Below, piece after piece: positions 16,735-17,700 of a DNA stretch of 64,000 nt (within the stretch, counting starts at the first letter, position 1; each line of letters opens with the position of its first letter). The notes beneath the pieces are model-generated. The model saw only the letters and a program-made list of their open reading frames with translations, did not search any database and was not told the DNA's origin. The position numbers and the translations under genes were made by a program. Source of the DNA: Podarcis cretensis (taxonomy: Eukaryota); assembly GCA_951804945.1 (NCBI GenBank), contig OX638150.1, positions 45,260,001-45,324,000 of the forward strand. Direction: 5' to 3'.

Positions 16735-17700
16735 ATCCAAGATGGTATGATATCCAAGCAGTGTGAAAAGTTTTATGAATTAAGATTTCATGTTGGCTTC
16801 AAGTATGAATGTATATATATATTAAAATGGAAGAACAAATGGAAGAACAAAGCTCAACCTCAGTATATTGGGAAATAGATTACACAAAACAAGTAACTGC
16901 TTACACACACATATATACACAAACACAGAGAGTCTCATACACATAAAAAACAAACTGAAATGCATCCAAAAAAACTTTTCAACTTTCAGGCACTCCTCAA
17001 TGAATCTGTGAAAAACTAATGAAGACTAAAATAATCTAGAAGGAGCCATAGTTACCACGAAAATTAGGAATAAGTTAAAATCGTGACTCCATACTAGAAC
17101 CTTAGCAGTCAACTCCATAATAATAAAACAAATGGAGTATGTGCTATATTCACAAAGGGCTAGATCGACATGGTTTAAAGCTAAACCTACTGAATTAATT
17201 CATAAATTGTCATTGCAACATAGATTATTTATATAAAAATTCTTTTGTTGCTTTTCTACTAAAAGAATTCAAAGTGACTTACAATGTAATGGATGATGAG
17301 AAAACAGTGGATATTTTATCTGGGTTTTAGTAAAGCATTTCATACAGCACTATACAATATCTTATGGTTAGAAAGCCAACATAAGATGTCTTGGACAATT
17401 AGTACAATCAAATGGATCAAAAACTGGCTATCTAACCGTATTAAGAGAGTAATCGTAACTGGCAGTCCATCTAGATGGGGAGACATTTCCAGTGGGATCC
17501 AGGGATCGCAATTCGGTCCCATTTTGTTTTATATCTTTATAAAAGATCTGGAAGACAAAGTAGAGAATATGCTAAATAAGTCTTTTGGCTTCTACTAATT
17601 AGGGAATGGTGAGCAGAGCTAGAACTAACATAGTAGTTGTAAAATAACTCTAAATATTTCTTTGAAATTGGATGATAAATTTACAGACCATATTCTAAAT
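16735..17700 (+). mobile_element. Ancient decayed CR1/L3 LINE ORF2 (reverse transcriptase) fragment, antisense to GABRB2
   Basis: ORF 17293-17598 reads [70 protein letters not shown], matching CR1 RT ([42 protein letters not shown]). Fainter collinear remnants: DG.HPRV-like near 16740, QHGF-like near 17168, KFADDTKLG-like near 17578-17607. Outer boundaries are approximate. Confidence 0.88.
17437..17547 (-). CDS. GABRB2: Alternative cassette exon, beta-2L long-isoform insert (111 nt, 37 aa)
   Basis: ctttgtcttccag|ATC...ACG|gttaga, phase 0/0, no stop. Encodes [37 protein letters not shown], which matches the human beta-2L insert as recalled ([38 protein letters not shown]) and sits in the equivalent intron. 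Confidence 0.92.

What the first reader, a model, noticed from the sequence alone, without database searches (positions are those of the whole stretch)
17293..17598. The beta-2L cassette exon is the antisense strand of an ancient CR1/L3 reverse-transcriptase core
Seen in sequence: bases 17437-17547 encode [37 protein letters not shown] on the minus strand and [37 protein letters not shown] on the plus strand. The plus-strand peptide lies inside a longer CR1-type RT frame (YLGFSKAF..WIKNWL..QGS.FGPILF.IFI.DL). The two frames are in exact codon register (17437-17293 = 48 codons). Established: mammalian beta-2L carries a 38-aa insert at this position (28/38 identical by my recall), and [19 protein letters not shown] is the CR1/L2 RT signature. 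Inference: a LINE inserted and was exonised before the synapsid-sauropsid split, and selection on the receptor peptide has kept the RT readable while the flanks decayed. I do not know whether this origin is already published or annotated.
Basis: partly seen in the sequence, partly recalled or inferred. Interest (0 to 1): 0.92.

Follow-up and report, generated by a model that had tools for sequence, protein, structure and literature searches.

The report
GABA receptor exon from LINE fossil
The optional 37-codon exon that makes the long form of the GABA-A receptor beta-2 subunit in this lizard is the reverse strand of a fragment of an ancient CR1/L3 jumping-gene reverse transcriptase, which is real and neat but was already annotated in human and mentioned in a 2009 paper.

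Summary
Window 17437-17547 (minus strand) is the in-frame 111-nt beta-2L cassette exon of GABRB2. It has AG and GT splice sites and lies between the exon ending ...MDVNK (23636) and the last exon, MDPHEN... (8009). It is 28/38 identical to the insert of solved mammalian beta-2 long chains (E 5e-11).

The plus strand, in the same codon register, reads as a CR1-type reverse transcriptase over 17311-17580. A phmmer search gave 7,811 hits, with 40-48% identity to turtle, bird and snake CR1 ORF2. Against a CR1 profile, the exon antisense alone scores 39.8 bits and the intron flank alone 31.2 bits; shuffles reach at most 8.2 bits.

A mammal-type antisense ORF (P0004) keeps an even cleaner VPQGSILGPILFNIFI motif, and it can encode all 38 residues of the mammalian insert. 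One LINE insertion, exonised before lizards and mammals split, is therefore the best reading.

It is not new. Zhao et al. 2009 (PMC2741204) report exon 10 in mammals and lizard, and state that the exon plus 85/66 bp of flanks is annotated as LINE3.

- The adjacent intron flanks are at least as conserved as the exon.
- The RT catalytic residues are lost.
- The 101-codon ORF is incidental.

The parts
17437..17547 (-). GABRB2 cassette exon (exon 10, beta-2L insert): 111 nt, 37 codons, phase 0
   Evidence: Translation. 28/38 identical to the insert of PDB beta-2 long chains, E 4.9e-11. The length is a multiple of 3. It lies between ...MDVNK and MDPHEN....
17548..17580 (-). Acceptor AG (17549-17548) and polypyrimidine tract of the cassette exon. 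This is the antisense of the purine-rich RT codons [11 protein letters not shown].
   Evidence: cttatttagcatattctctactttgtcttccag|ATC. RT alignment. 9/11 residues are conserved with the mammal-type ORF P0004.
17400..17436 (-). Donor GT (17436-17435; weak site ACG|GTTAGA) and the conserved downstream intron flank. This is the antisense of the RT codons K-W-I-K-N-W-L-S-N.
   Evidence: 10/12 residues are conserved with P0004.
17311..17580 (+). Fossil fragment of a CR1/L3-clade LINE reverse transcriptase. It covers RT motif A (YLGFSKAF, catalytic Asp lost) through motif B ([13 protein letters not shown]) to just before motif C (FADD is now SFGFY).
   Evidence: tblastn of turtle, bird and other CR1 ORF2 proteins: 41-46% identity, E 1e-15 to 1e-19, always at 17311-17580. 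Alignment. CR1 profile scores: 98 bits for the whole ORF, 39.8 bits for the exon part, 31.2 bits for the flank. Pfam RVT_1 profile positions 67-144.
17293..17598 (+). 101-codon open frame around the RT fossil; incidental, not a gene
   Evidence: The window holds 32 ORFs of 90 aa or more, so the length is unremarkable. The stop and start positions differ among related ORFs. Catalytic residues are lost.
23636..23880 (-). Upstream constitutive GABRB2 exon (M3 helix and the start of the M3-M4 loop), ending ...[10 protein letters not shown]
   Evidence: Best PDB match is the beta-2 subunit at 166 bits, against 143 bits for beta-3 and 123 bits for beta-1.
7662..8009 (-). Last GABRB2 coding exon (MDPHEN...WLYYVN, with M4)
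   Evidence: ORF listing; acceptor.

Best explanation
A CR1/L3-clade LINE copy landed in antisense orientation in the intron between the M3 exon and the last exon of GABRB2, in or before the last common ancestor of lizards and mammals. A 111-114 nt piece of the palm region of its reverse-transcriptase ORF became a cassette exon read from the opposite strand.

The element supplied every part of the exon:
- The acceptor AG comes from the D-L codon pair (gat ctg).
- The polypyrimidine tract comes from the purine-rich codons E-D-K-V-E-N.
- The donor GT comes from the N codon of S-N-R (aac).
- The coding sequence is the antisense of RT motif B, so GVPQGS.LGP.LFNIFI reads backwards as [15 protein letters not shown].

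Inclusion adds 37 aa (38 in mammals) to the intracellular M3-M4 loop and gives the beta-2L isoform. In human, this insert makes receptor currents more prone to ATP-dependent run-down (Zhao et al. 2009).

The two frames share codon boundaries. Purifying selection on the receptor peptide, and on the splice-regulatory intron flanks, has therefore passively frozen the RT reading, while the rest of the LINE has decayed beyond detection.

Shown here: the exon anatomy, the RT homology of exon and flanks, and homology with the mammalian insert. Inferred: a single ancient insertion, a regulatory role for the flanks, and use of the exon in this lizard.
For: - Exon and gene.
- RT homology: one search gave 7,811 hits, the best non-orthologous ones at E 6e-27 to 1e-14 and 40-48% identity over ORF residues 7-96. 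In one search the hit P0067 has APE endonuclease plus RVT_1.
- CR1 clade: the same proteins that hit 17311-17580 also match, with their C-terminal parts, the young CR1 tail at 37927-38514 (70-72% identity for the four closest; 41-59% for the others). In one search the named hits come from sea turtles, two birds (one of them named 'mobile element jockey-like') and a snake.
- Exon versus flank: the exon antisense alone scores 39.8 bits and the intron flank alone 31.2 bits against a profile of 114 CR1 RTs that excludes orthologues; shuffles reach at most 8.2 bits.
- Antisense coding: 26.9 of 36.4 codons of modern CR1 RTs could encode the lizard receptor residue on their antisense strand, against 7.0 when permuted.
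- Age: P0003 and P0004 are 71-72% identical, have precomputed RVT_1 hits, and carry VPQGSILGPILFNIFIKNLEDKVEN. In one search the antisense codon options of P0004 fit 38/38 residues of the insert shown.
- Literature: Zhao et al. 2009, reports the human L3 annotation and the presence of the exon in mammals and lizard.
Against: - Pfam RVT_1 on the lizard ORF is below the gathering score (17.2 against 29.6 bits).
- No other part of the LINE (endonuclease, the rest of the RT, the 3' tail) is detectable around the fossil, so clade assignment rests on 90 residues.
- No Dfam or Repbase L3/L2 models were on hand to separate CR1/L3 from L2 formally.
- The source organisms of P0003 and P0004 are unknown (unnamed ENA and Logan contigs), so their mammalian origin is inferred from the peptide they can encode.
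- Use of the exon in this lizard's mRNA was not tested.
- The absence from frog and fish rests on a 2009 statement about genome alignments, not on a test made here.
Confidence: 0.93

Rival explanations
1. Chance resemblance: any coding exon has a stop-poor antisense frame in codon register, and the RT-like motifs are coincidental.
For: Pfam RVT_1 is only 17.2 bits, below its threshold. ORFs of about 100 codons are common in this window, with 32 of 90 aa or more.
Against: Thousands of significant RT hits, the best non-orthologous ones at E 6e-27 to 1e-14. The exon part and the intron flank each score independently, 39.8 and 31.2 bits against at most 8.2 for shuffles. The alignment is colinear across RT motifs A and B.
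Confidence: 0.01
2. Independent or younger insertions: a squamate CR1 copy landed on or next to a pre-existing exon, and the human L3 annotation reflects a separate event or an overshoot of the repeat alignment.
For: CR1 is abundant and recently active in this genome: there are young copies at 37927-38514 and 51008-51211. The organisms behind P0003 and P0004 are not documented.
Against: The fossil is only 41-46% identical to living CR1 RTs, whereas the young copy in the same window is 70-72% identical, so it is old. The lizard ORF and the mammal-type ORF are 72% identical, with the same boundaries around the exon and highly conserved flanks. The receptor peptide itself is the antisense of RT motif B in both, so the exon cannot pre-date the element.
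Confidence: 0.03
3. The plus-strand 101-codon ORF is itself kept open by selection, either as a domesticated RT-derived protein or as an antisense micropeptide.
For: The frame is open for 101-114 codons in the lizard, its close relatives and the mammal-type sequences.
Against: The motif A Asp is Gly and the FADD box is SFGFY. The ORF ends differ between relatives, and the N-terminal part of the mammal-type ORFs has no RT homology. The fragment is about one tenth of an ORF2. Openness follows from constraint on the opposite strand together with the ordinary ORF background.
Confidence: 0.02

Closest known systems
Human GABRB2 exon 10 (beta-2L cassette) annotated as L3/LINE3 by RepeatMasker; noted by Zhao et al. 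2009, PLoS One 4:e6977 (PMC2741204)
   Same: Same exon, same position in the gene, the same 38/37-aa insert (28/38 identical), and a LINE3 annotation covering the exon plus its flanks. The paper also states that the exon is recognisable in lizard.
   Different: The paper gives one sentence and calls it a 'candidate LINE3'. It does not describe the antisense orientation, the RT motifs, the shared codon register or the origin of the splice sites. The human annotation spans 85 bp upstream and 66 bp downstream; in this lizard the readable fossil spans 33 bp upstream and 126 bp downstream. The lizard exon lacks one codon (Trp on the receptor strand, Pro of VPQGS on the RT strand).
CR1-clade LINE ORF2 reverse transcriptases of sauropsids (for example P0033 from Lepidochelys olivacea, P0080 from Mycteria americana, P0017 'mobile element jockey-like' from Limosa lapponica)
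   Same: Colinear over RT motifs A and B at 41-48% identity.
   Different: Only about 90 codons survive. The catalytic residues are lost. There is no endonuclease, no RT thumb and no 3' tail. The fragment is now read from the opposite strand.
Antisense Alu exonisation and ancient MIR, L2 or LF-SINE-derived exons (from my own knowledge of Sorek, Lev-Maor and Ast; Krull et al. 2007; Bejerano et al. 2006); see also the L2-derived IL18R1-Short isoform (PMC13232192, listed)
   Same: A retroelement inserted antisense in an intron supplies the pyrimidine tract, the splice sites and an alternatively spliced in-frame exon.
   Different: Here the donor of the sequence is the protein-coding RT core of an autonomous LINE, not a SINE or a UTR. 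The pyrimidine tract comes from purine-rich codons rather than from a poly(A) tail. The exon is of amniote age and codes for a conserved receptor segment.

Membership tests
CR1/L3-clade LINE (fossil fragment) | Significant, colinear homology to the reverse-transcriptase domain of CR1-clade ORF2 | tested here: met
   (7,811 hits; 172 at E<=1e-10). (41-46% identity at 17311-17580). Alignment. (98 bits against a profile of 114 CR1 RTs).
CR1/L3-clade LINE (fossil fragment) | The hits are CR1-clade rather than another LINE clade (L2, RTE/BovB, L1) | tested here: inconclusive
   All nine long hits tested also match a classical CR1 ORF2 C-terminus in the same window at 37927-38514. They come from turtles, birds and a snake. 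The LFNIFI(N/K)(D/N)L motif is CR1-like. However, no L2 or L3 reference models (Dfam, Repbase) were available for a formal comparison. The human copy is annotated as L3.
CR1/L3-clade LINE (fossil fragment) | Passes the curated Pfam RVT_1 threshold | tested here: not met
   17.2 bits against a cut-off of 29.6 bits for the lizard ORF. The mammal-type ORFs P0003 and P0004 carry precomputed PF00078 hits. This is expected for a fragment of about 90 residues.
CR1/L3-clade LINE (fossil fragment) | Intact catalytic residues (motif A Asp, motif C FADD) and the other parts of the element (APE endonuclease, 3' tail) | tested here: not met
   YLGFSKAF has Gly in place of Asp, and SFGFY stands in place of FADD. 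No further CR1 homology was found in 15800-19200. It is a dead remnant, as expected for an element of this age.
GABRB2 exon 10 (beta-2L cassette) | Lies between the M3-loop exon (...DVNK) and the last exon (MDPHEN...), in frame, with canonical splice sites | tested here: met
   111 nt; phase 0 at both ends. The flanking exon is closest to beta-2.
GABRB2 exon 10 (beta-2L cassette) | Sequence homology to the mammalian 38-aa insert | tested here: met
   28/38 identical, E 4.9e-11, to residues 360-397 of the 512-aa beta-2 chains.
GABRB2 exon 10 (beta-2L cassette) | Included in brain mRNA as an alternative exon in this species | not testable with these tools
Expression is documented for human, monkey and mouse only.
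Transposable-element exonisation | Both splice sites and the whole exon lie inside the element-derived sequence | tested here: met
   The RT homology at 17311-17580 encloses the exon at 17437-17547 and both splice sites.

The most novel reading that the evidence does not exclude
The single antisense RT fragment gave rise to the whole alternative-splicing module, not merely the coding exon: exon, both splice sites, pyrimidine tract and intronic control sequences. The RT-derived intron flanks would then have been under purifying selection at least as strong as that on the exon since the amniote ancestor. A corollary is that the conserved function of the insert lies in its N-terminal half (the antisense of RT motif B, 11/11 identical between lizard and mammal) rather than in the human CaMKII site Thr365, which aligns to Ala in the lizard.
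Probability: 0.4. Interest if true: 0.45.

Novelty: already known. Interest (0 to 1): 0.3.

Why it matters
This is a clean, deep-time example (lizard-mammal split, over 300 million years by common dating) of a neurotransmitter-receptor isoform whose extra peptide is the reverse reading of a transposon's reverse transcriptase. It shows how constraint on one strand can fossilise a reading frame on the other.

For GABRB2 biology, the long isoform has been linked to receptor run-down and to psychiatric genetics (Zhao et al. 2009). The comparison indicates which parts of the insert and its flanks have been conserved since the lizard-mammal ancestor. The core fact is already in RepeatMasker annotation and in the literature, so the value here is confirmation and anatomical detail, not discovery.

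Tried and rejected
- **The look-up of encoding contigs was closed.** No DNA of the related ORFs could be fetched. There was therefore no dN/dS in the two frames and no orthologous loci from turtle, crocodilian, bird, frog or fish.
- **The P0003 cluster was set aside.** The cluster (P0003, P0010-P0012; one member seen on 391 Logan and ENA contigs) may be human-derived. After seeing P0003 I left the whole cluster out of every later script and search. P0004 and its cluster, a different sequence, were used instead.
- **No joined (spliced) protein model was built or searched.** Exons were searched one by one by reference, so full-length beta-2 relatives in other vertebrates could not be collected.
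- **A permissive tblastn of 15800-19200 with long CR1 proteins found nothing beyond 17311-17580.**
- **An RNA fold of the exon with its flanks shows no unusual structure (z -0.73).**
- **Literature searches:** GABRB2 with exonization, CR1, transposable or LINE3 found only Zhao et al. 2009. Frith 2022 (PMC9004415) does not mention GABRB2 in its main text.
- **Rejected readings:** chance, a younger or independent insertion, and a functional plus-strand ORF (see the rival explanations).

Full report
**What is there**

On the minus strand, 17547 to 17437 reads as the 37-aa peptide IFYKD...SLNT. It is preceded by ...ctttgtcttccag and followed by gttaga. That gives a 111-nt, phase-0 cassette with a good pyrimidine tract and a rather weak donor (ACG|GTTAGA).

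The exon upstream in the gene ends ...[10 protein letters not shown]|gtaagt at 23636. The last exon begins ...ttttccag|ATGGATCC (MDPHEN...) at 8009. The upstream exon matches solved GABA-A beta-2 chains best: 166 bits, against 143 for beta-3 and 123 for beta-1.

The cassette aligns end to end with residues 360-397 of the 512-aa beta-2 chains in the PDB: 28/38 identical, E 4.9e-11, with one codon (the mammalian Trp) missing in this genome. The gene is therefore GABRB2 and the exon is its 'exon 10', the beta-2L insert in the M3-M4 loop.

Earlier scan notes and the repeat content (Sauria SINE, BovB, CR1) indicate a lizard genome.

**The other strand**

The plus strand carries a 101-codon ORF (17293-17598) whose codon boundaries coincide with those of the exon (144 nt = 48 codons offset).

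Pfam RVT_1 alone is weak: 17.2 bits, E 0.0043, below the cut-off, at profile positions 67-144. A phmmer search of 1.84 billion representative proteins is much stronger. It gave 7,811 hits at E<=1e-3 and 172 at E<=1e-10, with 40-48% identity over ORF residues 7-96.

- The long hits are LINE ORF2 proteins: P0067 has APE endonuclease plus RVT_1, and the others have RVT_1 at E 1e-32 to 1e-40.
- The named hits come from sea turtles, two birds (one of them labelled 'mobile element jockey-like') and a snake.
- The same proteins that hit 17311-17580 with their palm region also hit a young, classical CR1 ORF2 tail at 37927-38514 with their C-terminal parts (70-72% identity for the four closest, 41-59% for the others). 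This places them in the CR1 clade.

The alignment is colinear from motif A (YLDFSKAFD; here YLGFSKAFH) through W..WL..R.QRV and motif B ([21 protein letters not shown]; here [20 protein letters not shown]) to the position of the FADD box (here SFGFY, followed by a stop).

**Exon versus flank**

I built a profile from 114 CR1 RT segments, with all orthologue-like ORFs left out. It scores as follows:
- exon antisense alone: 39.8 bits (E 1.7e-14)
- intron flank 17293-17436 alone: 31.2 bits (E 7.8e-12)
- short flank 17548-17595: 0.5 bits
- 1,000 shuffles of each piece: at most 8.2 bits

The caveat is that the profile members were picked as hits of this ORF, which inflates the scores somewhat. Because the flank is not coding for the receptor, its independent score rules out an artefact of the receptor's codons. 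No further CR1 homology is detectable between 15800 and 19200.

**The peptide is the RT read backwards**

For modern CR1 RTs, on average 26.9 of 36.4 aligned codons could encode the lizard receptor residue on their antisense strand. The figure is 7.0 when positions are permuted. A turtle CR1 (P0033) fits 31 of the 38 residues of the mammalian insert shown (compared by eye). The segment [17 protein letters not shown] is thus essentially the reverse reading of SGVPQGS.LGP.LFNIFI.

**Age**

The search for homologous proteins found close relatives (P0001 at 94%, P0002 at 86%) and two clusters at 71-72% identity that carry precomputed RVT_1 hits (P0003, P0004). Their sequence ...[28 protein letters not shown](R/W)VPQGSILGPILFNIFIKNLEDKVEN... 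is a cleaner CR1 motif than the lizard's, and it has the extra codon.

The antisense codon options of P0004 fit all 38 residues of the mammalian insert. These ORFs are therefore the antisense of a mammal-type exon 10.

One member of the P0003 cluster was seen on 391 Logan and ENA contigs. I took that cluster as possibly human and used it no further. The source organisms of both clusters are undocumented.

Between the lizard and P0004, the RT-frame identity is 25/37 in the exon but 10/12 and 9/11 in the intron immediately next to the donor and the acceptor. Flanks as conserved as the exon itself would fit a regulated alternative exon.

**What is already known**

Zhao et al. 2009 (PMC2741204) make these statements:
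- Chicken expresses a different, dissimilar exon.
- The insert carries Thr365, a putative CaMKII site that shapes ATP-dependent current run-down.

No other paper in the searchable library discusses the origin. The RT-motif anatomy, the shared register, the splice-site derivation and the flank conservation are details I did not find described.

**Mechanism**

An antisense CR1/L3 insertion in the intron provided four things:
- a pyrimidine tract, from the purine-rich codons EDKVEN
- an AG, from the D-L codon pair (gat ctg)
- a GT, from the N codon in S-N-R (aac)
- an open antisense frame of 37-38 codons

Inclusion lengthens the M3-M4 loop. Because codon boundaries coincide, each receptor codon faces one RT codon. 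Selection on the receptor peptide and on the splice-control flanks has kept the RT legible, while the rest of the element decayed.

The RT is dead: the motif A Asp is now Gly and FADD is lost. The 101-codon openness is unremarkable, since the window holds 32 ORFs of 90 aa or more and the ORF ends differ among relatives.

**Limits**

- As a result there is no orthologous DNA, no dN/dS and no RNA-seq junction evidence for this species.
- No Dfam or Repbase models were available to separate L3/CR1 from L2 formally.
- An RNA fold of the exon region shows nothing special.

**Verdict**

The novelty class is 'already known' and the interest is modest.

Noticed in passing
window 37924-38670 (-) and 51008-51211 (-): There is a young CR1 ORF2 C-terminal fragment: a 248-aa ORF, 70-72% identical to sea-turtle CR1 ORF2 tails. 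A second, shorter CR1 piece lies in another GABRB2 intron. Both are far younger than the exon 10 fossil, which is 41-46% identical to the same proteins.
   Followed up: partly
window 17452-17463 (-), within the cassette exon: The human CaMKII site Thr365 reported by Zhao et al. 2009 (RRTT) aligns to Ala in the lizard (RWTA). The numbering is my inference from the 488-aa mature chain. The N-terminal 11 residues of the insert are identical between lizard and mammal, so the conserved role of the insert may not be this phosphosite.
   Followed up: partly
window 17400-17436 and 17548-17580: The intron sequence directly next to both splice sites is more conserved between the lizard and the mammal-type ORF (10/12 and 9/11 residues in the RT frame) than the exon itself (25/37). 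These are candidate splicing-control elements derived from the LINE.
   Followed up: partly
window 17488-17510: The lizard exon lacks one codon relative to mammals. This removes the receptor Trp (SLWDP becomes SLDP) and, on the other strand, the Pro of the RT motif VPQGS. The close relatives P0001, P0002 and P0009 share the deletion.
   Followed up: yes
window 42491-42877 (+) and 56093-56398 (+): Two ORFs end in nearly the same peptide of about 50 aa (..ALWSKPQSLGL.DQKVGS...GVSSRCSVPAPA.LAV.KH.KVQ.DK). They probably mark two copies of one interspersed repeat.
   Followed up: no
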